Part shown: positions 11,199 through 63,520 of the stretch, piece after piece
How positions within the stretch are numbered: position 1 is the stretch's first letter
Layout: every line of letters starts with the position of its first letter
IMG/VR virus record: IMGVR_UViG_3300042895_001344
Location: 124,001-188,000 of that record
Direction: 5' to 3' (one strand)
Length of the DNA: 64,000 nt
The notes under the pieces: generated by a model
Told to the model about the DNA's origin: nothing
Seen by the model: only the letters and a program-made list of their open reading frames with translations
Database searches by the model: none
Made by a program: the position numbers and the translations under genes

Positions 11199-13079
11199 TT
11201 ATTTTTTATTGTGTAACATAATATAAGGAGTTCCTTTAACATTAACCGCTGGTTCCATGTTAAATCCTTTATTCGTAACTTCTATCTGTGATTTTATAAC
11301 AAATTCGTTTGTTTTAGGATTCGATCTTTCATAATAATCTTTTTTCTCTTTATCGTAACCCTCAAGTCCTTTTCTTCCGGTTTCATCTCCCATAAGAAAT
11401 TTTCTCAATCTGTCGTTTTCTTTTTTGATCTGATTCTCCAAATCTTTGGTTGCAGATATTAAACCGTCAGTATACTTAGTCATTTCTTTACCGAAATTTG
11501 TCGCAACACCTTTTAATGTTTTATCCGAAAAATCTGTTGCCCATTTTAAATTTTCTTGTGCTATTTTTTCTAATGGAATTGCACCTTTGTATTTTGGATC
11601 ATCTCCTACATATTCATTTCTTCCAAATGCTCTATCTTTTGCTGTCTTAACACTTTTTAAACCCGCACCTTGTAACATATTTTCAATATTTTTAACTGAT
11701 GAAAATTGTTGTTTAGCAATTTGTTCAGGATTCATATCTTCAAAAGCCTTCCTATTAGCCTTTAATACATCTATTTGTGATTGTGTTAAGGAATCTAATG
11801 TAACTTCTGTTTGTTTACCAAATTTATCTGTTAAACTTTCAGGTATGGTAATTGACATTTTACCATCCTTCATTTGTGACATATTTGTAAGAAATTCTCT
11901 GTCATTTTTACTCATATCAAACCCTTTAGCTAATAAAACGTTATTAGCTTGTATTCTTTCTTGAGCAGCAATTGCTGTTTTATTTAGTTCTCCAGTTGTC
12001 ATACCTAATTGAGCTGCCATCTCTTTCGCTCTTCTTAAATTTGCACCCGTAACTTCAAACTTTTTTTGTTCATTATTGTATGTTGCTAAACCACCTGCAG
12101 CACCAATTAACGCATCTTGTAAACCCTCAACATTATTCGTTGCCATATACATTAACTTAAGTGGATCATTAAAATCACCAATTGCACCACCTAATACTTG
12201 TAAATTTGCGGTTAATTCAATTGCACTATCAGGACTCATAACTTTATCCGCAATCTTAAATACGTCATTCATATTCGTTCTAAATTCAAGAGATTTTTGT
12301 ATCATTCTATTTAATCCTTGAACACCGTTAGAAAACCCGTATTCGTTTAATTTACCTATATCTGTTTTCAACATTTCTGTTGTTTTCTTTGCATTTAAAC
12401 CTAAAGAAATTGACGATCTACCTGCCGTATCAATTTTTAATAAAGTATCGGCAGCACCAAATCCCACTTTTTCAAATTCACTCATTGTCTCCGACATATC
12501 TCTTAAAGAACTACCAAATGCTCTAGTTGTTACTAAAGAATTTTCCATCGTTTTTTGAGATAATAAGTTAAATCTACCAGATTTTTCACCTAACCCAGTA
12601 ACTAAATCACCCAAATTTTCCATATCAAATCCTAAAGTTGCTGCCATAGGAACGGTCTCTAATATGATATCTCTATATGCTCTTGATAGTTCTCCCGTAA
12701 TACCTATTTTTTCATTAATAGTTGTATGTAATTGAGACTCTCTTTCTAATTGTTTGAATATTTCATTTTGAAGTGCTGAGGCCGCAGTTTTGTAATTTGT
12801 TAACCCCTCCATATTAACTTTAAATTCACCACCCATTTCTGATTTTGATGAAACACCTTTTGCCATTGCTTTCGCAACATCTATTGGGTTAGTTAAACTT
12901 CTATTTGCACTTTGTGTGGTTGATGTAGTATTTGATTGTATTGATCTTCCGTATCTAGATTGATTACCGATCCAACTCTGTGTTGCAGGATCTCTTCCAC
13001 CATCATTTATATAAGCACCAACAGCAGAATTTTTATCTGCATAATTGTTTACGTAATATTCTTTATCTCTTACCGACAT
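11199..13079 (-). CDS. Tape measure protein (626 aa)
   Basis: Ala/Gly/Leu/Met-rich helical sequence; follows tube and chaperone genes; size similar to T4 gp29. Confidence 0.7.
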   Translation of the reverse strand: MSVRDKEYYVNNYADKNSAVGAYINDGGRDPATQSWIGNQSRYGRSIQSNTTSTTQSANRSLTNPIDVAKAMAKGVSSKSEMGGEFKVNMEGLTNYKTAASALQNEIFKQLERESQLHTTINEKIGITGELSRAYRDIILETVPMAATLGFDMENLGDLVTGLGEKSGRFNLLSQKTMENSLVTTRAFGSSLRDMSETMSEFEKVGFGAADTLLKIDTAGRSSISLGLNAKKTTEMLKTDIGKLNEYGFSNGVQGLNRMIQKSLEFRTNMNDVFKIADKVMSPDSAIELTANLQVLGGAIGDFNDPLKLMYMATNNVEGLQDALIGAAGGLATYNNEQKKFEVTGANLRRAKEMAAQLGMTTGELNKTAIAAQERIQANNVLLAKGFDMSKNDREFLTNMSQMKDGKMSITIPESLTDKFGKQTEVTLDSLTQSQIDVLKANRKAFEDMNPEQIAKQQFSSVKNIENMLQGAGLKSVKTAKDRAFGRNEYVGDDPKYKGAIPLEKIAQENLKWATDFSDKTLKGVATNFGKEMTKYTDGLISATKDLENQIKKENDRLRKFLMGDETGRKGLEGYDKEKKDYYERSNPKTNEFVIKSQIEVTNKGFNMEPAVNVKGTPYIMLHNKK

Positions 13080-14021: not shown

Positions 14022-14056
14022 AGAAAAACCGATAATCTTGTGAACTATCGGTTTTC
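14022..14056 (-). terminator. Intrinsic terminator after tail tube gene
   Basis: 10-bp stem aaaaccgata (14025-14034) / tatcggtttt (14046-14055) with a T-tract on the minus strand. Confidence 0.8.
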
Positions 14057-14076: not shown

Positions 14077-14565
14077 TTAGTATATCAAAATACATCTATC
14101 CATTCTCAAAGAACATGTAATATTAGCTAATTCATCTCTGTTATAGTCTAATTCACCAAAGTTCAAGTCAGTTAAGAAACAGTTTTCTAATAACCATTTT
14201 TCAACTACTACTCCTGTTGGGTCTAACATCTCCAATTCAATATCCTTTTTATAACCTGCAGCATAACCCATACGACCTGTTACAGATTCAGCATGTAAAC
14301 GGAACCATTCCATTAAAGCTTGAGAAGCTGAAGGTCCAATTGGATCTCTAAAAGTCATTTTAATTTCATTCCACTCAAATCTACCTGCAACATATGTTGA
14401 TGTGTTCAGGAAAGGAATTGCAACTGAATTGATTTTAGCACTTGGTCTTGACGCTGCAGATACATACCATTCGTTTATACCCAAAGATGAGTTGAATCTT
14501 ACGATAAATCGGTTGACCCTTTTTGGTTCGTAAGGTGTCGGCATTTTCATTAATAAATCGGCCAT
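14077..14565 (-). CDS. gp19: Tail tube protein
   Basis: YEPKRVNRF...GRFEWNEIKMTFRDPI...AAGYKKDIELEMLDPTGVVVEKW...FGELDY; directly after the sheath gene. Confidence 0.9.
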   Translation of the reverse strand: MADLLMKMPTPYEPKRVNRFIVRFNSSLGINEWYVSAASRPSAKINSVAIPFLNTSTYVAGRFEWNEIKMTFRDPIGPSASQALMEWFRLHAESVTGRMGYAAGYKKDIELEMLDPTGVVVEKWLLENCFLTDLNFGELDYNRDELANITCSLRMDRCILIY

Positions 14566-14603
14566 ATTGTGTGTTTGTTAAGTTTTGTTAGTTATTTACT
14601 TTC

Positions 14604-14612
14604 TAATAAATA
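14604..14612 (-). promoter_or_regulatory. Late motif TATTTATTA
   Basis: Upstream of tube gene. Confidence 0.7.
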
Positions 14613-14660
14613 TATCCAAAAGGAAAATAATTTTATTTTAAATTAATTATCTGAAAAAGG

Positions 14661-14691
14661 TTGTTTATGTCAATTATTTTTCGTAGTTTTT
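14661..14691 (+). promoter_or_regulatory. Candidate host-type (Bacteroidota sigmaA-like) promoter pointing into the intergenic repeat element
   Basis: TTG (14661-14663), 20-nt spacer, TAGTTTTT (14684-14691), which fits TAnnTTT(G) imperfectly; no ORF downstream. Confidence 0.35.
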
Positions 14692-14696
14692 TACAG

Positions 14697-14786
14697 GCCC
14701 CAGTATCTAGTTCCAGTTTAATACTCTACTTTAATAAATAATATATCATTAATAAATACTAGAATATCTAGTTCCAGTATTCTGGG
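14697..14786. repeat. Intergenic repeat element
   Basis: 14-bp direct repeat TATCTAGTTCCAGT (14704-14717, 14765-14778), TTAATAAATA twice (14731-14740, 14749-14758), CCCAG/CTGGG inverted ends, AT-rich core. Confidence 0.8.
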
Positions 14787-14816
14787 TAAAGTATAATTAT
14801 TTTTTTGTTATACATA

Positions 14817-14832
14817 TGTTCCACGTGGAGCA
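14817..14832. promoter_or_regulatory. parS-like palindrome TGTTCCACGTGGAGCA
   Basis: 15/16 match to the chromosomal parS palindrome TGTTCCACGTGGAACA; intergenic and GC-rich in an AT-rich background. Confidence 0.55.
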
Positions 14833-14834
14833 TT

Positions 14835-14862
14835 AAAAAAGGGTACCATTTCTGATACCCTT
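14835..14862 (-). terminator. Intrinsic terminator after tail sheath gene
   Basis: Stem aagggta (14839-14845) / taccctt (14856-14862) followed by T6 on the minus strand; may be bidirectional. Confidence 0.7.
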
Positions 14863-14886
14863 CTTATTTTTATATCTCCTTTTAGA

Positions 14887-17871
14887 TTAGATATTTTCAA
14901 ATGAAGCTCCTGTTGGAGTAATAATGAATTCCACATCGATGTATTCAAGAGAACGAGTTGGTTTGATGTAAATCTTACCTCTCATTGTGTTTGCGTCGAT
15001 GTCTTCAGGATCGTTAGAAACTGTTACACGGAAGTCATACAAACCTCTTTCTTTCTTAATTGCATCCAAGATAGGGTTTACCAATCTTAAGAATTCATTT
15101 CTTACTTGGTCATCGTTTTGTTCAAACAATAATCTTACAGAAACTGCAGAAATTAACTTTCTTGCTCTTAATAACAATCTTCTTACGTTGATTCTATCCA
15201 AAGCGGATTCTCTAACTTGTAACGTTTTGTTACCCCAAATAATAGTACCTGTATCAGAGAATGTAGCGATTGGGTTAATTCTGTTCTTATATAATACGTC
15301 TCTATCGTCTAAAGTCAATTTTTTAGTTGCTTTGATAGCATTTATCAAACCTCTACTATAACCCGCAACTGCGAACCAAGGATAAGACACGTTGTCAGTT
15401 AAAGCAATATTCTTAACAACCTCACCTGTTGGTGGGATATATAATTGTGTTGCATTATCTGTATCTCTTACTTGAATCCAAGGCCAATATGTTGCCGAGT
15501 AGTTAGAATCTATACCTGCATTATCTAAAGCAGTAACAATATCAGTCGTTGCTGAAGGACCTGTGATATTTGGTGAGTTCATAATATATAATGAATCTGC
15601 TCTTTCAGTTTCAATCATATCAATCGCTTGATTAACTAATGAACTATGACGATCAAAGTTAATACCAGGTGTAGCAAATACGTTAATATCTACCGCTTCA
15701 GGATTTGAATATGTTTCAATACCTTGTAAGTAAGCGTAATAGTCAGAATTACCTACTGATTCACTAAACACTCCTCCGGGGGTTGTATGTCCTAACTTAT
15801 AAATAGATTTACCAAAAATATAACGATCGTCGTTAGTTCTTTCTGATCTGTATATATCCCAACCGTCTCTACCTCCGTAAACCGAAAAAGTGAATTTACG
15901 GAAATTAATATTAGTTAATTTATTATTACCATTATTATTAAGCTCATCTTGACCTTCTAAATCATATGGTGTTGTTTGGAAAGTTGTTGTTCCAGTAATT
16001 GTAGAGGCGTTTACAGACAAATGGAAACCAAATGTTTCTGTTGTTGCCATCTCACCTTTATATTTTAATAAATCTCTATCGAATCCAACAGCATCAGATA
16101 AACCTAACATAACTTTTCTTACCTTATCTCCACCTTCAATATTAGGTGAACCATTCACATCGTAAGTTTCAACATCACCCGCATCGTTATATTTTGTTTT
16201 GAATATTACATTACCTAATCCCATATTAATTCCTGATACAGTACCAAAGTTTTTGTTGTTTGCAAAACCTCTAAAACCAGCAGGAATAGCATCTACAGGT
16301 GCTCCGTCCGCCATAAGCAACATAATTCTTTTAGAAACTAACGCGTATTCACCATCAGATGTACCGATTTTTTTAGCTATATAACCTGGAGTATCTGGAT
16401 TCATAGAACATCTTGAATATTTTTCAAGAGCTACTTGATTCTCATCAGTATCGTTAAAATCACGAACCACTAAATCAAACTCCATAGTTTCTAAATTAAT
16501 ATTTTGAATATTGATTTTTACTTCAAAGTTAGCGGCCTCTCCATCGGAGATTGTAATAACTTGAAATAAATCAGCAACATTACCACCACGAACTTCAGAA
16601 ACAACCATCGGTGAAATTGTTGTATCCCATGGTTTTAAGTAATTATATGAATTAGAATCTTCTTCTGATTCATATGAAACGTCCATAGAAATACCTCTTA
16701 CTAATCCTCTTTCAAAGGCGGTTCCTAAATAATTAGGATATGATTCATGTACATATACCGGATAGTCACCTTTATCTTTATCAAATACATCAGTTCCTAA
16801 AACTTTAGAAATATATTTTGATGATGATCGATTTAATGAACAAACAAATTGTTTAACTCCACTTGTTGTACCTGTTACGTTGATTGAAAACTCACCCATT
16901 GGGTTTGTATTCATATCAGATCCCGTAACACCTGATAATATGAATTTATTATCATCCTTAACTTCATGTATTAATGTTTGTCCGCTATATATACCTCTTG
17001 ATCTTATTGCTGCAACCACTACATTATGGTATTCATCGGCTAAAAGTGCTTCCCAATCAAATTGAGTAATTGACCATTTGTTAGTTGAATTTGTAAATGT
17101 GAATAAATAAGAATAAATACCATTTACACCGTCACCGTCTGGAGGAGTGACCAAACCATCAGATTGGTGATGCATTGTATTCCACCATTCTTTTGTATTA
17201 TTACTACTACTATATTTTTCTCCAGATAATGGAGAAACTAATTCTGTACCATTTCCAACAATTGCACTATCTTCTGTTCCTTCCGTATTTCTTCCTATCC
17301 AAAAATATTCATTAGTTGATCCAGTAGTTGAACCTTCATAATCACCGTAAATATCTTTTAAATATGTTACAATATCAGTACCATCAACAGATGTTACACC
17401 TGACAAATGAGCAATAATTTCATTTAATGAATTTATTGAAGATCCGGTTTCTGTTGTTGTAATTCCTGTTGTTGTAATTGTTACACTACCAACTTCATTA
17501 GTTACGCCAGAATACCCTTCTAAAATTACACCACCTACGGTTTTAATACCGAATGTTTTATATGGTCTATAACCTGTAAGACCCAATACTCTCGTTACGA
17601 ATAATTGATTAGATTCTTGTAAATATGATTTTGCAACATATCCTAATTCATATTTTGGATTACCATCACTGTACTTTTCAGGTGAAGTAGATCCAAAATA
17701 CAATTTGAATTCGTCAAAATTTGAAATTAAAATAGGTTCGAAAGCTGGACCTTTTAAAGTCTCACCAGCTAAACCTAATGTTGTAACACCTACACTCTGT
17801 GCTACAAATGTTAAATCGAGCTCGGATGTATAAACACCTGGAGACACGAAAACTCTGTTATTACTTGCCAT
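14887..17871 (-). CDS. gp18: Contractile tail sheath protein (994 aa)
   Basis: N-terminal VFVSPGVYTSELDLT; C-terminal YPWFAVAGYSRG, RINPIATF, IWGNKTLQ, LDRINVRRLL, IKPTRSLEYI. Confidence 0.95.
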   Translation of the reverse strand: MASNNRVFVSPGVYTSELDLTFVAQSVGVTTLGLAGETLKGPAFEPILISNFDEFKLYFGSTSPEKYSDGNPKYELGYVAKSYLQESNQLFVTRVLGLTGYRPYKTFGIKTVGGVILEGYSGVTNEVGSVTITTTGITTTETGSSINSLNEIIAHLSGVTSVDGTDIVTYLKDIYGDYEGSTTGSTNEYFWIGRNTEGTEDSAIVGNGTELVSPLSGEKYSSSNNTKEWWNTMHHQSDGLVTPPDGDGVNGIYSYLFTFTNSTNKWSITQFDWEALLADEYHNVVVAAIRSRGIYSGQTLIHEVKDDNKFILSGVTGSDMNTNPMGEFSINVTGTTSGVKQFVCSLNRSSSKYISKVLGTDVFDKDKGDYPVYVHESYPNYLGTAFERGLVRGISMDVSYESEEDSNSYNYLKPWDTTISPMVVSEVRGGNVADLFQVITISDGEAANFEVKINIQNINLETMEFDLVVRDFNDTDENQVALEKYSRCSMNPDTPGYIAKKIGTSDGEYALVSKRIMLLMADGAPVDAIPAGFRGFANNKNFGTVSGINMGLGNVIFKTKYNDAGDVETYDVNGSPNIEGGDKVRKVMLGLSDAVGFDRDLLKYKGEMATTETFGFHLSVNASTITGTTTFQTTPYDLEGQDELNNNGNNKLTNINFRKFTFSVYGGRDGWDIYRSERTNDDRYIFGKSIYKLGHTTPGGVFSESVGNSDYYAYLQGIETYSNPEAVDINVFATPGINFDRHSSLVNQAIDMIETERADSLYIMNSPNITGPSATTDIVTALDNAGIDSNYSATYWPWIQVRDTDNATQLYIPPTGEVVKNIALTDNVSYPWFAVAGYSRGLINAIKATKKLTLDDRDVLYKNRINPIATFSDTGTIIWGNKTLQVRESALDRINVRRLLLRARKLISAVSVRLLFEQNDDQVRNEFLRLVNPILDAIKKERGLYDFRVTVSNDPEDIDANTMRGKIYIKPTRSLEYIDVEFIITPTGASFENI

Positions 17872-29688: not shown

Positions 29689-32667
29689 TTAACTACCGAA
29701 TGTTATTGATATTGGGTCGGCATATACAAATGGATTAGCCGATGTTACTGTTTGTGTGGCAGGTCCCGTTTGTATTGTAAAGATTCCGCCAATAGTATCA
29801 GCAAAGAACGTACCTGGTGTTGTACTTGTGTATGTTACAGTGTTAGCACCTTGTGTTATAGATATTGTACCACCATTAGTTGCCAATTCAGTAAATTGAG
29901 TTGTGTAGTTGGTACCATTACTATCATCTAAATTGAAATAAATTTCATTAACACCGTTTGATTTATTTGGATTAAATGTTTCAGTTACTTCATTAGTTTC
30001 ATTATTTCTTATTAAAAATATAGAATTACCATCTGATAACGGTGGTTGTGCATCAAAAATACCTCCTTCATCACTATAGAAATACCACGCACCTATTCCT
30101 CCACCTATTGATGTTGGTGTGGGTGTCGGTGTTGGTCCTCCTAATCCTATACCTACAACGACATCAATCGAACCGCCAGACCATGTGTAAGTATATGTTC
30201 CATTAGTTAAACCTAAACTCGATAATGTTTGACCTGTAAATGTTTGACTACTTGAAATGTTCGCACCTGATGTGTATCCTGTTGGTACAATCAATAAGTA
30301 TGGTGGTGCCATATTCATGATTACACCAAACGCCTGTCCAGTACCTGAACTATGTGGTAATCCAGAACCACTTCCGAAATTACTTGGTACAGATGTGAAT
30401 CCACTATATGAACTACCTGATGAACCACTAGCCCCACAAACAAATGTTGCATTACTAATACCTAAACCTCCATTTCCAAATGGTCCAGCACTTGATGATA
30501 CTAAAGTTAATCCACTAAGGTCAACTGTTCCCGATGCAGACATAACAACATTAGAACCTACTTCAGTTATAGTAACTGTCATTGGTGCCGAACCAGATGT
30601 TGGTGTTGGAGTTGGTGTACTTGTTGCCGGTAAAGGTGTTGCAGTACTTGTCGGTTCTGGTGTTGGTGTACTTGTTGCAGCTAAAGGTGTTGGTGTAGGT
30701 GTATCTGTTGGTACTCCTGTTGGTGCTGGTGTCGCCGTTGCAGGTTCAGGTGTACTTGTTGCCTCAGGTGTTGGTGTAGGTGTGTCTGTTGGAACGTTTG
30801 TTGGTTCTGTTGTAGACGTAGGTGTTGGAGTTGGTGTCGATTGACCTGAAACTAATATATCTATATAGAAAACCTCCCCAAATGTAAATGTAGAAACGGG
30901 CGAACTTTGTACTAATGATAATTTAGTTGAATCTAAAAAATACGAACTATTACTACCGTCATATACCATGGCAATATTTGTACCTGAATATATTGCACTA
31001 TTTCCATTTTGACATAATGTTACAGTAAATGAAGTACCTACTGCATTTCCGAAGTATGTTGTTTGGTCTGTTCCATCATTATCAATTTCATTAAAATATA
31101 ATACCGAAGAATTAGTACCTAATATATTAACGAGATTTAATGCTGTTGCCGGCATTGTACTTGATATCCAAAGTGACTCACCTGAACTTGGTGTTGTTAA
31201 TAAATTTGACAACACATAAGGTTTACCACTACATGATGCAACTGTTGTTGGTGTAGGGGTTGGTGTTTCAGTAGGTGTCGGTGTTGGTGTTGCGGTTGAT
31301 GAAACTACTGTTGGTGTAGGTGTTGGTGTCATTTCAGGGAACACAGCTTTTAATGTTGCTGTATCACCAGTAATAGTTACAATGGTGTTAGATGAATTAG
31401 GTACAGGTAAATTAACATTAGTACCCTCCCAATTTTGGAATAACCCACTACCACTAAACGCAGTAATAGAATATTGTTGATTTTTAACAACACTGATTGT
31501 TGTATCTGATGTATATGTGACTCCACCGAATGAAATACCATCATAACCCATAACTATATCAATAAATAACGACGCCATTTCTGGTGTTGGTGTTGGTGTA
31601 GCGGTTGGACCTGGTGTTGGTGTTGGTGTAGGTGTATTTGATGGAATACAGTTAACAATATCCACAAATTGACTATTGGTAAACTGAGATAAGAAATAAA
31701 ATCCACTACCATCGGTAAGAATGTAATACCCATCAAATAGTAATGAAACTGTTTCATTTGAATTTGAACTTACGTAAACATAATCAAAAATTTCACCATC
31801 GACATAACCGATAATTGAATCCTGTGCGGAACAACTTGAATTCATTAAACAATCAAGTGCACTACAAGCGGTGGTTAAATCATTAAAAAATGGACCCGTA
31901 TTATCGGTATTACCAATTATTGTAATTTGATATGGATGATTAATTGGTTCATTCGTTGCCGTTGGTGTACTTGTTGCCGGTAAAGGTGTATCTGTTGGTA
32001 CGGGAGTTGGTGTACTTGTTGCCGGTAAAGGTGTAGGAGTATCAGTTGGTACCGATGTTGAATCTGGCGTTGGTGTAGGAGTTGGGGTTGTTGATGTAGA
32101 TTCTAATAAAATATTATCCCCATTTTCTTGTAATAAACTATCACCATTCTCTTGTAATAAACTATCACCTAAATTATCTGTCGGTGTTGGTGTAGGTGTT
32201 GCTGTAGCTGGTAACGGAGTTGGAGTACTAGTTGCCGGTAAAGGAGTAGGTGTTGCCGTTGGTAAATTTGTAGGTGTAGGGGTTGGTGTTGGTAAATCTT
32301 CACCATATGTTGTAAAATAACCGTTATTATTTAACCAAGTTTTAGCATCACTACCATTTGTAAATGGTTCTAAACCATCTGTTATTGGTAAAACGTTTAA
32401 TAAATCTAATAAAGATTGTTCGGTTAAATCTGTTGATCTCCAAAAATTAATATAGGAATCTTCATCCACCGGTGTCGGATGATCTCCCGTTGGTACTTGG
32501 TTGGCAATAACATAACCTAACTCTTCATCGGGTCCCATCCACCATTTAACCCCACCTGGATCTTGTGAATAATCTTGATCTGAAACACCTATTGCGATGT
32601 TTCCAATTTGTATTGTTCCGTCTATGGTGGTACCTGTGTTGTATGCGAAGGGTCTTGTTGTTGCCAT
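29689..32667 (-). CDS. Multidomain virion appendage protein with Pro/Thr-rich linkers (992 aa)
   Basis: Beta-rich domains separated by (PT)n linkers; LLQENGD repeats; late motif upstream. Confidence 0.7.
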   Translation of the reverse strand: MATTRPFAYNTGTTIDGTIQIGNIAIGVSDQDYSQDPGGVKWWMGPDEELGYVIANQVPTGDHPTPVDEDSYINFWRSTDLTEQSLLDLLNVLPITDGLEPFTNGSDAKTWLNNNGYFTTYGEDLPTPTPTPTNLPTATPTPLPATSTPTPLPATATPTPTPTDNLGDSLLQENGDSLLQENGDNILLESTSTTPTPTPTPDSTSVPTDTPTPLPATSTPTPVPTDTPLPATSTPTATNEPINHPYQITIIGNTDNTGPFFNDLTTACSALDCLMNSSCSAQDSIIGYVDGEIFDYVYVSSNSNETVSLLFDGYYILTDGSGFYFLSQFTNSQFVDIVNCIPSNTPTPTPTPGPTATPTPTPEMASLFIDIVMGYDGISFGGVTYTSDTTISVVKNQQYSITAFSGSGLFQNWEGTNVNLPVPNSSNTIVTITGDTATLKAVFPEMTPTPTPTVVSSTATPTPTPTETPTPTPTTVASCSGKPYVLSNLLTTPSSGESLWISSTMPATALNLVNILGTNSSVLYFNEIDNDGTDQTTYFGNAVGTSFTVTLCQNGNSAIYSGTNIAMVYDGSNSSYFLDSTKLSLVQSSPVSTFTFGEVFYIDILVSGQSTPTPTPTSTTEPTNVPTDTPTPTPEATSTPEPATATPAPTGVPTDTPTPTPLAATSTPTPEPTSTATPLPATSTPTPTPTSGSAPMTVTITEVGSNVVMSASGTVDLSGLTLVSSSAGPFGNGGLGISNATFVCGASGSSGSSYSGFTSVPSNFGSGSGLPHSSGTGQAFGVIMNMAPPYLLIVPTGYTSGANISSSQTFTGQTLSSLGLTNGTYTYTWSGGSIDVVVGIGLGGPTPTPTPTSIGGGIGAWYFYSDEGGIFDAQPPLSDGNSIFLIRNNETNEVTETFNPNKSNGVNEIYFNLDDSNGTNYTTQFTELATNGGTISITQGANTVTYTSTTPGTFFADTIGGIFTIQTGPATQTVTSANPFVYADPISITFGS

Positions 32668-39566: not shown

Positions 39567-39597
39567 TTTGTTTTTCCAATTTTTTTAGTTATATTTT
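39567..39597 (+). promoter_or_regulatory. Host-type promoter (TTTG - 19 nt - TATATTTT)
   Basis: Close to Bacteroidota -33 TTTG / -7 TAnnTTTG; upstream of a glycosyltransferase. Confidence 0.5.
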
Positions 39598-54420: not shown

Positions 54421-54428
54421 CAAATATA
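54421..54428 (-). promoter_or_regulatory. Bacteroidota -7 element TATATTTG
   Basis: Exact TAnnTTTG with TTGG further upstream. Confidence 0.65.
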
Positions 54429-54450
54429 CTATATTTTTTAGAATATACCA

Positions 54451-54484
54451 AAAATAAAAAACCCCCGATTTCTCGAGGGTTTTT
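54451..54484 (-). terminator. Intrinsic terminator after major capsid gene
   Basis: AAAAACCCTCGA-GAAA-TCGGGGGTTTTT then T-tract on the minus strand. Confidence 0.85.
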
Positions 54485-58819: not shown

Positions 58820-58896
58820 TAATATTTCATATTATTATTTCTTATGGTGTTTTTAAAAAATAACTAAAATACTTGGAATAACCAAAAATAATTTCA

Positions 58897-58904
58897 TATA
58901 TTTG
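58897..58904 (+). promoter_or_regulatory. Bacteroidota -7 element TATATTTG upstream of rpsU
   Basis: Exact TAnnTTTG with CTTGG further upstream. Confidence 0.65.
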
Positions 58905-61741: not shown

Positions 61742-63520
61742 TTATCTACGTTTACCAAATAACCAAGAATTCTCTTGATATGTTTGTTTACTGACATTCA
61801 TATTATTATCTCGATAATATAAATTATTATTATCCGTTCCCATTGAACCTATTTGATCAAATGCGGTACCATATGAATAGAATGATTTACTTGTCTCATA
61901 TGATCTTTCACTCATAGTCCAAGAATCTAACATTGCTTTGTTCGCATTTTCGTTCTTTTGTAATAAATTAAATGATACATCCGCAGCATATAAAGCCATT
62001 GACATACCCATAATAGCATCATCATGTGTTCCTTTCATATGATCAGGTCTACCGTTCATATAAACAAACGTGTTAAGTTCGTTTAATAATCTTGCAGATC
62101 TAACAATAAATCCTTTTCTAAGTTGTTCCTCAAATGCTGCAACAATTTGAGTTCTTTTGTTGTTAAAGTTAAGACCTGGTATTTTCTCCATCGCCTTAGC
62201 GTTATAGTCCCAAATGTTTTGAGTATTAACACCCTCAACGTATACGTTTTTGTAATTTAACTCAGTTAATTTTCTTGATGTTGCAACTCCCATTCCACCT
62301 GTAATATCCGTTACAATAAACGCATTACCATATAGGATAGCCCATTTGTATGCAACTGCCGCTAAGTCATCGGGAGGTATTTTACCAATATATTCTGCAA
62401 CCTGTTCCCTATCATCAAAATCTATAATTGATATAGCCGAAAAATCCTCACTATCTCCTCTACTAACATCCACACCCATAATATAACGATGACCAATTAT
62501 TGGTTCTTTCCATTGCCAAAACGTAGCCTGCATGTATTTTTCAATAGGTTCTCTAATCATGTTTTTAGCAATATTCTCTTGAATATCACCAGGGATAACA
62601 CCATCTCCCGAACCTAAGAAATCACATTCCAACTCCTGAGCAATTTTACGTCTATCGTATTTAAATTTCTTAGACATTGACTCAAACCACGAAGAAAATG
62701 GTTTATAACCATCCTCTAAAAGTTTGTTATATTCTTTCATATCAAAATCATGTAAAACAACTTCATCGTCATTATATTGTTCTCTATTCAACATGTAATG
62801 ACAGATGTCCTGACATTTAACCCAATGTAAATCTTTGGTGTAACGAGGGTCTTTAAACCACCTTAAATCTGTTATATGGAAATCATTGATTCCACGTAAT
62901 GCTTGGTCGTAAACACCGTAATAGATAGGGTCATAACCATTTGGAGTGGAGATAAGAATAATCTTACCACCCGTTGATAGGGACGCCATAGATGCTGCCC
63001 AAAAATCATCACCTGCTTCAATATATGCTGCCTCATCAAATACAAGTATGGTAGGTGTATAACCACGAAGGGCATCCGCTGAAGTTGCAACCGCCTTAAC
63101 CTCACAACCATTATTTAATCTAAATCTACTCTCTGAGTTTTTATCAGGTGAGAACCCAACATTTAACCATTCAGGCCATTGTTCCAAGAAGTGTCTAACC
63201 TTATTAGCCATCTCCACCGCAGTATCACGTTTGTTTGCAATAAGTAGAACTCTCTCAGGATTATCGGGTTTTGCTAATTGTAATTTTTTTGATAACCATG
63301 CGGCCGTTACTGTTGTTACACCCGCCTGTCTATATTTTCTTGTAATGTTTTCGTTGTAATCTTCGTAGTCCTTTATTAGTTGAATTTGATCTTCAAACAG
63401 GTCCATTGGGACATACTTCTTCTGTGTATTATCGAATGTTTGTAAATACGTTCTAAGTGCATACGGAGTATCTTTTATAATCTTTGCATACTCAATTAAT
63501 TGTTCCGTTCTGGTATTCAT
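61742..63520 (-). CDS. terL: Terminase large subunit
   Basis: RQAGVTT (Walker A variant), LVFDEAA (Walker B), ISTPNG, MGVDVSRG, HDD. Confidence 0.95.
   Translation of the reverse strand: MNTRTEQLIEYAKIIKDTPYALRTYLQTFDNTQKKYVPMDLFEDQIQLIKDYEDYNENITRKYRQAGVTTVTAAWLSKKLQLAKPDNPERVLLIANKRDTAVEMANKVRHFLEQWPEWLNVGFSPDKNSESRFRLNNGCEVKAVATSADALRGYTPTILVFDEAAYIEAGDDFWAASMASLSTGGKIILISTPNGYDPIYYGVYDQALRGINDFHITDLRWFKDPRYTKDLHWVKCQDICHYMLNREQYNDDEVVLHDFDMKEYNKLLEDGYKPFSSWFESMSKKFKYDRRKIAQELECDFLGSGDGVIPGDIQENIAKNMIREPIEKYMQATFWQWKEPIIGHRYIMGVDVSRGDSEDFSAISIIDFDDREQVAEYIGKIPPDDLAAVAYKWAILYGNAFIVTDITGGMGVATSRKLTELNYKNVYVEGVNTQNIWDYNAKAMEKIPGLNFNNKRTQIVAAFEEQLRKGFIVRSARLLNELNTFVYMNGRPDHMKGTHDDAIMGMSMALYAADVSFNLLQKNENANKAMLDSWTMSERSYETSKSFYSYGTAFDQIGSMGTDNNNLYYRDNNMNVSKQTYQENSWLFGKRR

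What the first reader, a model, noticed from the sequence alone, without database searches (positions are those of the whole stretch)
14566..14886. Sheath-tube intergenic element: possible replication origin or small RNA
Seen: this is the largest non-coding stretch in the window (about 320 bp), in a place where T4-like phages usually have adjacent genes. It has a plus-strand host-like promoter (14661-14691) with no ORF behind it, a 14-bp direct repeat 61 bp apart, an AT-rich core with two TTAATAAATA copies, CCCAG/CTGGG ends that could close a roughly 90-nt structure, a hairpin ACTAGA-ATA-TCTAGT, then the parS-like site. Known: T4 origins are a promoter plus a downstream unwinding element that forms an R-loop. 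Inference A: an R-loop/iteron origin with adjacent parS. Inference B: an sRNA whose two AAUAAAUA tracts are complementary to the UAUUUAU(U/A) late-leader motif, or DNA decoy sites for the late sigma.
Basis: partly seen in the sequence, partly recalled or inferred. Interest (0 to 1): 0.7.

Follow-up and report, generated by a model that had tools for sequence, protein, structure and literature searches.

The report
Conserved origin-like spacer between sheath and tube
The 321-bp gap between the tail sheath and tail tube genes of this uncultured freshwater T4-like giant phage is a conserved, one-per-genome block of DNA signals that looks most like a replication origin, but no experiment yet shows what it does.

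Summary

Both genes read on the minus strand (sheath, spacer, tube). 82 distinct versions of the spacer from 141 related viral contigs keep the same layout:
- an intrinsic terminator after the sheath gene, the only part with clear RNA-type covariation
- a 16-bp palindrome whose family consensus is letter for letter a natural chromosomal parS variant (66 of 82)
- ACTRGA hexamers with inverted CCCAGWAT/ATACTGGG ends around an easily melted AT-rich core; the array is unique in two relatives' genomes (one complete, one 92%)
- an invariant block that reads on the plus strand as TTG-N20-TAnTTTTT, a Bacteroidota-type host promoter with no gene behind it (80 of 82)
- the late promoter (TATTTAT) and leader of the tube gene

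Cultured relatives have only 45-94 bp at this position.

No structured RNA is supported. Six metatranscriptomes give no contig over the core, and GC skew is uninformative.

My best reading (about 0.35) is a T4-style origin: an orphan early promoter firing into an unwinding element, with accessory protein sites. A plus-strand small RNA, a tube-operon control region and a ParB-loading or packaging site remain open.

The parts
14835..14860 (-). Intrinsic terminator of the sheath gene. Stem GGGTATC/GGTACCC at 14841-14860, T-run at 14835-14840. The upstream side is A-rich, so it could also stop plus-strand transcripts.
   Evidence: Seven of 7 stem pairs show changes on both sides among relatives. 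The position is kept while the sequence is replaced. The simple terminator scan did not list it.
14816..14833 (.). parS-like palindrome. The window has TGCTCCACGTGGAACA (14817-14832), one mismatch from the family consensus TGTTCCACGTGGAACA.
   Evidence: Unique in the 217-kb record. One exact copy, at this spacer, in each of four relatives' records. Present within 3 mismatches in 66 of 82 distinct spacers. The exact consensus occurs in clusters in many bacteria, for example four copies in 400 bp next to gidA/mnmG in Chitinophaga solisilvae.
14791..14813 (.). Inverted repeat GTATAA-N11-TTATAC.
   Evidence: The TATAA...TTATA columns are conserved in the alignments. Only 2 of 6 pairs show changes on both sides.
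14698..14786 (.). Hexamer array with inverted ends. On the minus strand: CCCAGAAT (14779-14786), ACTGGAACTAGATA (14765-14778), palindrome ACTAGA-TAT-TCTAGT (14758-14772), the AT-rich core, ACTGGAACTAGATA (14704-14717), ATACTGGGG (14698-14706).
   Evidence: The number of ACTRG/CYAGT motifs varies from 1 to 13 between relatives. It is the densest cluster in the complete 310-kb relative (10 per 150 bp, next best 3, mean 0.16) and in G002 (12 against 4), but not in G006. The arms vary independently, so this is a sequence motif rather than a stem.
14721..14757 (.). AT-rich core, a candidate unwinding element. It holds two late-promoter-like TATTTAT motifs on the minus strand (14752-14758 and 14734-14740).
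   Evidence: The least stable 40-bp duplex of the spacer starts at 14731. The spacer holds one of the 13 least stable regions of the 217-kb record, the least stable of the whole complete relative G001, and ranks in the top 3 in G006 and the top 40 in G002. Late-promoter matrix scores are 10.0 and 6.6, against 9.2 for the tube's own promoter.
14661..14694 (+). Invariant block. On the minus strand it reads GTAAAAAACTACGAAAAAT plus TTGACATAAACAA. On the plus strand it reads as an orphan host-type promoter, TTG (14661-14663), N20, TAGTTTTT (14684-14691). The predicted plus-strand start is near 14697-14700.
   Evidence: Present in 82 of 82 distinct spacers. TTG-N20-TAnnTTT with exactly 20 nt in 80 of 82. 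The same pattern sits 4-50 nt before 13 co-oriented genes of this phage. The exact 18-mer is unique in G001, and in 113 of 120 viral contigs it lies 104-129 nt before a tube gene. The next plus-strand ORF is 3.3 kb away.
14646..14673 (-). Sigma-70-type match TTGACA-16-GATAAT pointing at the tube gene. Probably incidental.
   Evidence: 11 of 12. It is the only one of 17 such matches in the record that lies in non-coding DNA. The -10 is lost in more distant relatives, while TTGAYA....CAA stays.
14606..14612 (-). Core of the tube gene's late promoter (TATTTAT, 47 nt before the ATG).
   Evidence: Eight invariant columns (ATATTTAT) in the 54-sequence alignment, and TATTTAT present 40-56 nt before the ATG in all 82 distinct spacers. 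47 of 216 genes carry TATTTAT upstream; the fuller TATTTATA form is 32 co-oriented against 9 opposite, and it often directly follows a terminator. The same motif is all that the 45-bp sheath-tube spacer of Flavobacterium phage immuto holds.
14566..14605 (-). A-rich 5' leader of the tube mRNA, without a Shine-Dalgarno sequence.
   Evidence: Read. Similar AACAAACAC-type leaders stand before other large structural genes.

Best explanation
The spacer is a conserved, single-copy, composite cis-acting DNA locus. Its outer parts are ordinary. The first about 50 bp hold the sheath gene's terminator, and the last about 50 bp hold the tube gene's late promoter and leader.

The roughly 215 bp in between most likely work as a T4-style replication origin. 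The proposed steps are all inferred:
1. Early in infection, host RNA polymerase starts at the orphan plus-strand promoter (14661-14691), antisense to the late genes.
2. It transcribes into the AT-rich, easily melted core 25-60 nt downstream.
3. The RNA stays hybridised there as an R-loop and primes DNA synthesis, as at T4 oriF (uvsY) and oriG (gene 34).
4. The two-way terminator stops this transcript before it enters the sheath gene.
5. The ACTRGA hexamer array, the palindrome inside the promoter spacer (TTGAYA...TCAA) and the parS-type palindrome are sites for accessory or regulatory proteins. Candidates are host ParB or the phage's own ParB-like protein.

Shown: the anatomy, its conservation, its uniqueness and the helical instability.
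Inferred: promoter activity, the R-loop, protein binding and origin function.
For: - One copy per genome: the repeat, the block and the palindrome are unique in the 217-kb record and in the complete 310-kb relative.
- Conserved in 82 distinct spacers. The exact block sits before the tube gene in 113 of 120 contigs.
- Orphan promoter geometry is kept in 80 of 82, and it matches this phage's own early-type promoters.
- The core is among the least stable duplex regions. It is the global minimum in G001.
- The number of short repeats varies between relatives, as with iterons.
- Insertions in the three relatives examined (HNH or SGNH-like ORFs) all land between the terminator and the palindrome and leave the module intact.
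- A family B DNA polymerase and an SNF2 helicase lie 5-11 kb away.
- Cultured relatives with the same gene order lack the module (45 and 94 bp).
- From memory: T4 origins are a promoter plus a downstream unwinding element, and T4 oriE and oriG lie among late genes.
Against: - No initiation was observed. GC skew follows gene direction, with no turn at the spacer.
- No initiator gene was identified.
- The repeats are 6-7 bp with spacings of 6, 9 and 14-15 nt and no helical phasing, unlike classical 17-22 bp iterons.
- In G000 and G002 some 10-40 other regions are as easily melted.
- The module is physically tied to the tube promoter and carries two more late-promoter-like motifs, which also fits a purely transcriptional role.
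- The plus-strand -7 element ends in T, not the consensus G.
- The parS-like site is missing in 15-16 of 82 relatives.
Confidence: 0.35

Rival explanations
1. A small non-coding RNA gene of about 170 nt on the plus strand. It would start near 14698 from the orphan promoter, fold into four or five hairpins (ACTAGA/TCTAGT, CCAG/CTGG, GTATAA/TTATAC, the palindrome, the terminator) and end at the two-way terminator.
For: The promoter, about 170 nt and a terminator are the anatomy of an sRNA gene, and the promoter is conserved. In the named structure 88.5% of cells pair, against 82.9% in shuffles. RNA-library contigs of related strains run 185-255 nt from the sheath stop into their spacers (loose ends).
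Against: Outside the terminator only 6 of 23 pairs change on both sides. One-sided changes give wobble pairs on one strand in some clades and on the other strand in other clades. The 5' half varies in length (55-130 nt) and in hexamer number. There is no Rfam match. There is no contig over 14722-14865 in six metatranscriptomes that cover both neighbouring genes at depths up to about 60. The proposed pairing to late leaders fails, because the TATTTAT motif lies upstream of the transcripts.
Confidence: 0.2
2. A transcription control region for the tube and baseplate genes. It would hold tandem late promoters (14758, 14740 and 14612 on the minus strand), with hexamer and palindrome operators for a dedicated regulator. 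Any plus-strand promoter would act by interference.
For: The module stays attached to the tube gene when ORFs are inserted upstream. AGTATTTAT in the core is conserved in nearly all of the 32 aligned relatives and scores like a real late promoter. The palindrome ACTAGA-TAT-TCTAGT overlaps it. Contigs X24 (an RNA run) and X27 (run kind not on record) end at 14721-14727 and 14726, about where a start from the 14740 motif would fall.
Against: The hexamers and the block occur nowhere else in complete genomes, so the regulator would serve a single promoter. From memory, T4-type late promoters need no upstream sites. Cultured relatives express the tube gene from a 45-bp spacer. Contig ends can equally be assembly breaks at variable sequence.
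Confidence: 0.2
3. A centromere-like, ParB-loading or packaging-recognition site. Host ParB, or the phage ParB-like protein, would load at the parS-type palindrome. Alternatively the hexamer clusters flanking an AT-rich core would mark a pac site, as in P1.
For: The exact family consensus equals a clustered, origin-proximal bacterial site. There is one copy per genome. Relatives G001-G003 encode a 251-260 aa ParB-like protein (PHROG 12305, E 6e-22). Four plus three hexamers around an AT-rich core recall P1 pac (from memory).
Against: The palindrome is absent in 15-16 of 82 relatives and carries 1-3 mismatches in most others, including in its central CG. No Pfam ParB_N match reached the family cut-off in any record. 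Its TRGAAC half-site is shared with the hexamers, so another protein may read both. No terminase was seen among the annotated neighbours. Contig ends scatter over the spacer, with no fixed terminus.
Confidence: 0.15
4. Nothing functional lies between the terminator and the late promoter. The middle would be a decaying relic of a mobile element with inverted ends.
For: The inverted ends CCCAGTAT/ATACTGGG flank an AT-rich segment, which recalls a miniature transposable element. The spot next to it takes up homing-endonuclease and other ORFs.
Against: There is a single copy per genome and no other copies anywhere. Invariant blocks persist across 82 distinct spacers whose tube proteins differ by up to 17%. 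No resolvase was found, and a tyrosine recombinase in only one of five records.
Confidence: 0.07

Closest known systems
T4 origins oriF (uvsY) and oriG (gene 34): promoter plus downstream unwinding element, R-loop primed (recalled from memory)
   Same: A promoter with no gene of its own fires into an AT-rich, easily melted segment 25-60 nt downstream. It lies inside a late-gene region of a T4-like phage and is about 120-200 bp in size.
   Different: The promoter is of host (Bacteroidota -33/-7) type rather than MotA-dependent. It is flanked by hexamer arrays, inverted ends and a parS-type palindrome that T4 origins lack. Neither activity nor an R-loop has been shown.
Iteron origins (lambda ori, plasmid oriV, T4 oriE with RepEB; from memory)
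   Same: A cluster of short repeats in both orientations beside an AT-rich region. The copy number varies between relatives and there is one copy per genome.
   Different: The units are 6-7 bp (one 14-bp pair), not 17-22 bp. There is no helical phasing and no initiator gene was identified.
Chromosomal parS bound by ParB/Spo0J (TGTTNCACGTGAAACA)
   Same: The family consensus TGTTCCACGTGGAACA is an exact natural variant, found clustered next to gidA in Chitinophaga and in many phyla. The window's copy has one mismatch.
   Different: It sits in a T4-like phage in which no ParA was looked for and no canonical ParB was found. It is a single site, degenerate in many relatives and missing in about a fifth. 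Binding is untested.
P1 pac site (hexamer clusters flanking a bendable core; from memory)
   Same: Four and three related hexamers on either side of an AT-rich centre, in one copy.
   Different: The hexamer differs and carries no GATC. It is not near a terminase gene, and there is no evidence of cleavage or fixed ends.
Sheath-tube junction of cultured relatives (Flavobacterium phage immuto; Microcystis phage Mel-JY01)
   Same: The same gene order, a 162-aa tube protein (38% identity to immuto) and the same ATATTTATAA late motif before the tube gene in immuto.
   Different: Their spacers are 45 and 94 bp. In immuto the spacer holds nothing but the late motif.

Membership tests
Intrinsic (rho-independent) terminator | G+C-rich stem-loop followed by a T-run directly after a gene, with the stem kept by compensatory change | tested here: met
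   Stem at 14841-14860 and T-run at 14835-14840. Seven of 7 pairs change on both sides across relatives.
T4-type late promoter (this lineage's version, TATTTATA) | Short AT-rich -10-like element, co-oriented with and close upstream of many late genes, with no -35 | tested here: met
   47 of 216 genes carry TATTTAT upstream; TATTTATA is 32 co-oriented against 9 opposite. Matrix score 9.2 at 14612. Invariant in relatives. Shared with Flavobacterium phage immuto.
T4-type R-loop origin | An early or middle promoter that is active in infection | tested here: inconclusive
   The motif fits, and the geometry is conserved in 80 of 82. No plus-strand transcript was seen or could be excluded.
T4-type R-loop origin | A DNA unwinding element just downstream of the promoter | tested here: inconclusive
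   The core is the least stable duplex in G001 and ranks in the top 3 in G006, but only in the top 13 in G000 and the top 10-40 in G002.
T4-type R-loop origin | A persistent RNA-DNA hybrid and phage-dependent replication of a plasmid that carries the element | not testable with these tools
   Needs a cultured host.
Iteron-type origin | Three or more direct repeats of about 17-22 bp, helically phased, plus a cognate initiator gene | tested here: not met
   The units are 6-7 bp, spacings peak at 6, 9 and 14-15 nt, and there is only one 14-bp pair. No initiator was recognised among the annotated neighbours.
Chromosomal parS | A 16-bp palindrome matching TGTTNCACGTGAAACA-type sites used in bacterial chromosomes | tested here: met
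   The window's copy has 1 mismatch. The family consensus is an exact match to sites clustered near gidA in Chitinophaga and clustered in many phyla.
Chromosomal parS | Bound by a ParB that is present in the same cell | not testable with these tools
   The host is unknown. No ParB_N match over the cut-off was found in the phage records. A ParB-like PHROG 12305 protein exists in relatives only.
Bacterial or phage small RNA gene | A discrete transcript detected | tested here: not met
   No contig over 14722-14865 in six RNA runs. These are assembled contigs, so absence is weak evidence.
Bacterial or phage small RNA gene | A conserved secondary structure with covariation, or membership of a curated family | tested here: not met
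   Covariation is confined to the terminator. Rfam gave only sub-threshold chance matches.
Invertible segment, or res/att recombination site | A site-specific recombinase encoded by the phage, and both orientations seen among close relatives | tested here: not met
   No resolvase in 5 records, and a tyrosine recombinase in 1 of 5. All close relatives share one orientation.

The most novel reading that the evidence does not exclude
A lytic T4-like giant phage of Bacteroidota carries a plasmid-like 'origin plus centromere' cassette in its tail-gene cluster. It would be an R-loop origin driven by a host-type promoter and coupled to a genuine chromosomal-type parS. That site would load host ParB (or the phage's ParB-like protein) onto replicating phage DNA, to organise or position it or to draw ParB away from the host chromosome.
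Probability: 0.15. Interest if true: 0.8.

Novelty: new variant of a known kind. Interest (0 to 1): 0.55.

Why it matters
Replication origins and other cis-acting sites are unknown for nearly all uncultured large phages. This family is common in lake metagenomes: more than 600 contig matches to the tube protein and more than 120 contigs with the exact 18-bp block.

A precisely bounded, single-copy element of about 215 bp gives a concrete target for origin mapping, for ParB and parS biology in phage infection, and for building replicons or reporters once a host is found.

The work also yields this lineage's late promoter (TATTTATA, shared with a Flavobacterium phage) and its early-type promoter pattern. 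Both point to a Bacteroidota host.

Tried and rejected
- Rfam with permissive thresholds gave only sub-threshold chance matches at the terminator.
- A nucleotide search of cultured phages found no match.
- Sigma-70 promoters as a class are not enriched in non-coding DNA of this phage (1 of 17). I therefore treat the strong minus-strand match as incidental.
- GC skew in the 217-kb record and in the complete 310-kb relative follows gene direction and does not turn at the spacer.
- RNA folding of either strand: the minus-strand z-score of -5.9 comes mostly from the terminator and from a long-range pairing that relatives do not keep. The consensus folds add nothing beyond the DNA palindromes.
- CCCAG/CTGGG as an RNA closing stem: the third position varies independently in the two arms.
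- Invertible switch or recombination site: no consistent recombinase and a single orientation.
- Small ORFs in the spacer: indels that are not multiples of three between relatives, and only a 6-codon plus-strand frame.
- Fixed genome end at the spacer: contig ends fall at scattered distances, 11 to 364 nt before the tube gene.
- Another repeat-rich spacer in the complete relative (231.0-231.7 kb), checked as an alternative origin, turned out to be a CRISPR-like array.
- Co-occurrence of the palindrome with the ParB-like gene could not be judged, because the records that lack the palindrome are only 24-59% complete.
- Metatranscriptomes were available only as assembled contigs without strand, so transcript ends could not be mapped.
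- No protein-DNA complex prediction was run, because that tool gives no verdict for DNA.

Full report
**Setting.**
- The window is bases 124,001-188,000 of a 217-kb viral metagenome record. The record is about 30% G+C, is estimated 65% complete, and comes from lake water.
- The genes around the finding read on the minus strand. They are a 994-aa tail sheath (14887-17871), the 321-bp spacer, a 162-aa gp19-type tail tube (14077-14565) and a T4-type baseplate protein.
- A family B DNA polymerase and an SNF2-type helicase lie 5-11 kb away.
- Cultured phages are only distant relatives. Flavobacterium phage immuto has the same order (sheath, a 162-aa tube protein 38% identical, baseplate hub), but only 45 bp between sheath and tube. 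Microcystis phage Mel-JY01 has 94 bp.
It is the largest gap in the window.

**The observation.**
- Every listed feature is at the stated place: the 14-bp direct repeat, the two TTAATAAATA copies, the CCCAG/CTGGG ends, the ACTAGA-ATA-TCTAGT hairpin and the palindrome.
- The repeat length and the number of ACTRG/CYAGT motifs are rarely reached in Markov resamples: 14 and 5 of 2000.

**Conservation.**
- Two protein-seeded scans gave 141 loci that hold both genes, with 82 distinct spacers. Tube proteins are 83-100% identical.
- All but four spacers are 253-420 bp long.
- Read in the coding direction, they share one plan:
  1. A terminator hairpin whose sequence is replaced from clade to clade while the pairing is kept.
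  2. A palindrome with consensus TGTTCCACGTGGAACA.
  3. TATAA-N-TTATA.
  4. CCCAGWAT, then ACTRGA-type hexamers in both orientations around an AT-rich core, then ATACTGGG.
  5. An invariant block: GTAAAAAACTACGAAAAAT followed by TTGAYA....CAA.
  6. The invariant ATATTTAT 40-56 nt before the ATG.
- Three of the four long spacers were examined. They carry an inserted ORF (an HNH endonuclease of 138 aa in two, an SGNH-like protein on the other strand in one), always between the terminator and the palindrome, so the module stays whole and stays with the tube gene.
- The exact 18-bp block was found in at least 120 viral contigs. In 113 of them it lies 104-129 nt before a tube gene.

**Uniqueness.**
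- In the 217-kb record the repeat, the block and the palindrome occur only here.
- In a complete relative (310,542 bp, terminal repeat of 99 bp) the hexamer cluster has 10 motifs per 150 bp, against a next best of 3 and a mean of 0.16. The block and the palindrome are single there too.
- A second large relative gives 12 against 4. A clade with few hexamers does not stand out.

**The ordinary parts.**
- The terminator is the only helix with real covariation: 7 of 7 pairs.
- TATTTAT(A) is this lineage's late promoter. It stands upstream of 47 of 216 genes, mostly 11-25 nt before the ATG and often right after a terminator; its fuller form TATTTATA is 32 co-oriented against 9 opposite. It is the only signal in the 45-bp spacer of the Flavobacterium phage.
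- It is therefore a DNA element upstream of the transcript. This removes the idea of an sRNA pairing to it in late leaders.

**The promoter question.**
- The sigma-70 scan finds nothing on the plus strand and a strong match on the minus strand. Such matches are not enriched in this phage's non-coding DNA, and the -10 is lost in more distant relatives.
- Genes here lack Shine-Dalgarno sequences. Non-late genes are preceded by TTG-N19-21-TAnATTT, the -33/-7 pattern of Bacteroidota.
- Read on the plus strand, the invariant block is exactly that: TTG, 20 nt, TAGTTTTT. It has this spacing in 80 of 82 relatives and no ORF for 3.3 kb.
- The spacer between the two elements is itself conserved and partly palindromic, which suggests an operator.
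It points into the AT-rich core and towards the hairpin, which has an A-run on one side and a T-rich run on the other.

**RNA or DNA?**
- Consensus folding of either strand adds only the short DNA palindromes.
- In the named five-hairpin structure, few pairs outside the terminator change on both sides. One-sided changes give wobble pairs on the plus strand in some clades and on the minus strand in others. That is what a DNA palindrome under loose constraint would do.
- Six metatranscriptomes cover both flanking genes at depths up to about 60 but give no contig over 14722-14865. Two give one contig each over 14551-14721, at depth about 4.
- One RNA-run contig (X24) and one contig from a run of unrecorded kind (X27) end at 14721-14727. 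A minus-strand start from the TATTTAT at 14734-14740 would fall there, but they may equally be assembly breaks.
- Contigs of other strains run 185-255 nt from the sheath stop into their spacers.
- These data have no strand and are assembled, so they argue against an abundant sRNA but settle nothing.

**The palindrome.**
- The family consensus occurs letter for letter in many bacterial genomes, often as 2-5 copies within a few kb. In Chitinophaga solisilvae four copies lie in 400 bp between gidA/mnmG and ybeY, which is the classical setting of chromosomal parS.
- The window's copy differs at one base.
- It is within 3 mismatches in 66 of 82 spacers and absent from one clade, which has another conserved sequence there.
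- No canonical ParB was found. Three larger relatives encode a ParB-like protein with a DGQHR motif (PHROG 12305, E 6e-22) about 150-180 kb away.
- The half-site TRGAAC also arises where two hexamers abut, so one protein might read both.

**Unwinding.**
- By nearest-neighbour stability, the core holds the least stable 40- and 60-bp windows of the entire complete relative.
- It is among the top 3 regions in a second relative, the top 13 in the window's own record and the top 10-40 in a fourth.

**Weighing.**
- The combination fits the T4 kind of origin best: a single-copy, conserved, non-coding module with an orphan early-type promoter aimed at an easily melted core, variable numbers of short protein-site-like repeats, an adjacent parS-type site, and insulation by a two-way terminator. 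I put this at about 0.35.
- The same anatomy also fits a plus-strand sRNA gene (0.2), a dedicated control region with tandem late promoters for the tube operon (0.2), or a ParB-loading or packaging site (0.15). An inert relic is unlikely (0.07).
- Nothing here tests replication directly.

Noticed in passing
L007 (about 90-510 of its spacer), L013, L062; the equivalent place in the window is 14834-14835: In relatives, the junction between the sheath terminator and the palindrome takes up extra ORFs. Two contigs have a 138-aa HNH-type endonuclease, and one has a 213-aa SGNH/GDSL-like protein on the opposite strand. A fourth contig (L141) has a 1036-bp spacer that I did not examine.
   Followed up: partly
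G001 (IMGVR_UViG_3300017917_001524) 231,096-231,600: The complete 310-kb relative carries a CRISPR-like array of about 8 copies of a 36-nt repeat, GTTG...CACAAC, with spacers of about 30 nt. From memory, the repeat ends resemble type VI-B repeats of Bacteroidota. The 9-nt core of the repeat shows no such cluster in the window's own record, G002 or G006.
   Followed up: partly
whole record; for example window 11199-13079, 29689-32667, 61742-63520 upstream regions: The late promoter of this lineage is (A/G/C)TATTTATA. It usually ends only 4-17 nt before the ATG, so many late mRNAs would have very short leaders. A few large structural genes, sheath and tube included, instead have leaders of 35-45 nt rich in AACAAACAC. 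The same motif is used by Flavobacterium phage immuto.
   Followed up: partly
window 39577-39597, 54421-54452, 58855-58885, 58875-58904: Early-type promoters follow the Bacteroidota pattern TTG-N19-21-TAnATTT[A/T/G]. A further motif, TATATTAT, stands close to many start codons. No Shine-Dalgarno sequences are seen. Together these point to a Bacteroidota host.
   Followed up: partly
G001 239,941-240,693; L082 961-1713 (G003); also G002: A ParB-like protein of 251-260 aa with a VVDGQHR motif (PHROG 12305, E 6e-22; Pfam ParB_N and GmrSD_N only below cut-off) in three larger relatives. It is not in the 217-kb record, which may simply lack that part of the genome.
   Followed up: partly
window 14024-14056 (minus strand): A second terminator-like hairpin of 14 pairs with a T-run stands directly after the tube gene, so the tube gene looks like a transcription unit of its own.
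   Followed up: no
G001 247,968-309,947; G000:C1:215,495-216,072 (outside the window): The complete relative has 31 tRNA genes clustered in its last 60 kb. The window's own record shows tRNA-like sequence in its largest spacer. None lies in the window.
   Followed up: no
G001 187,797-188,246: A 273-aa tyrosine recombinase in the complete relative only. It is absent from the 92%-complete relative G002.
   Followed up: no
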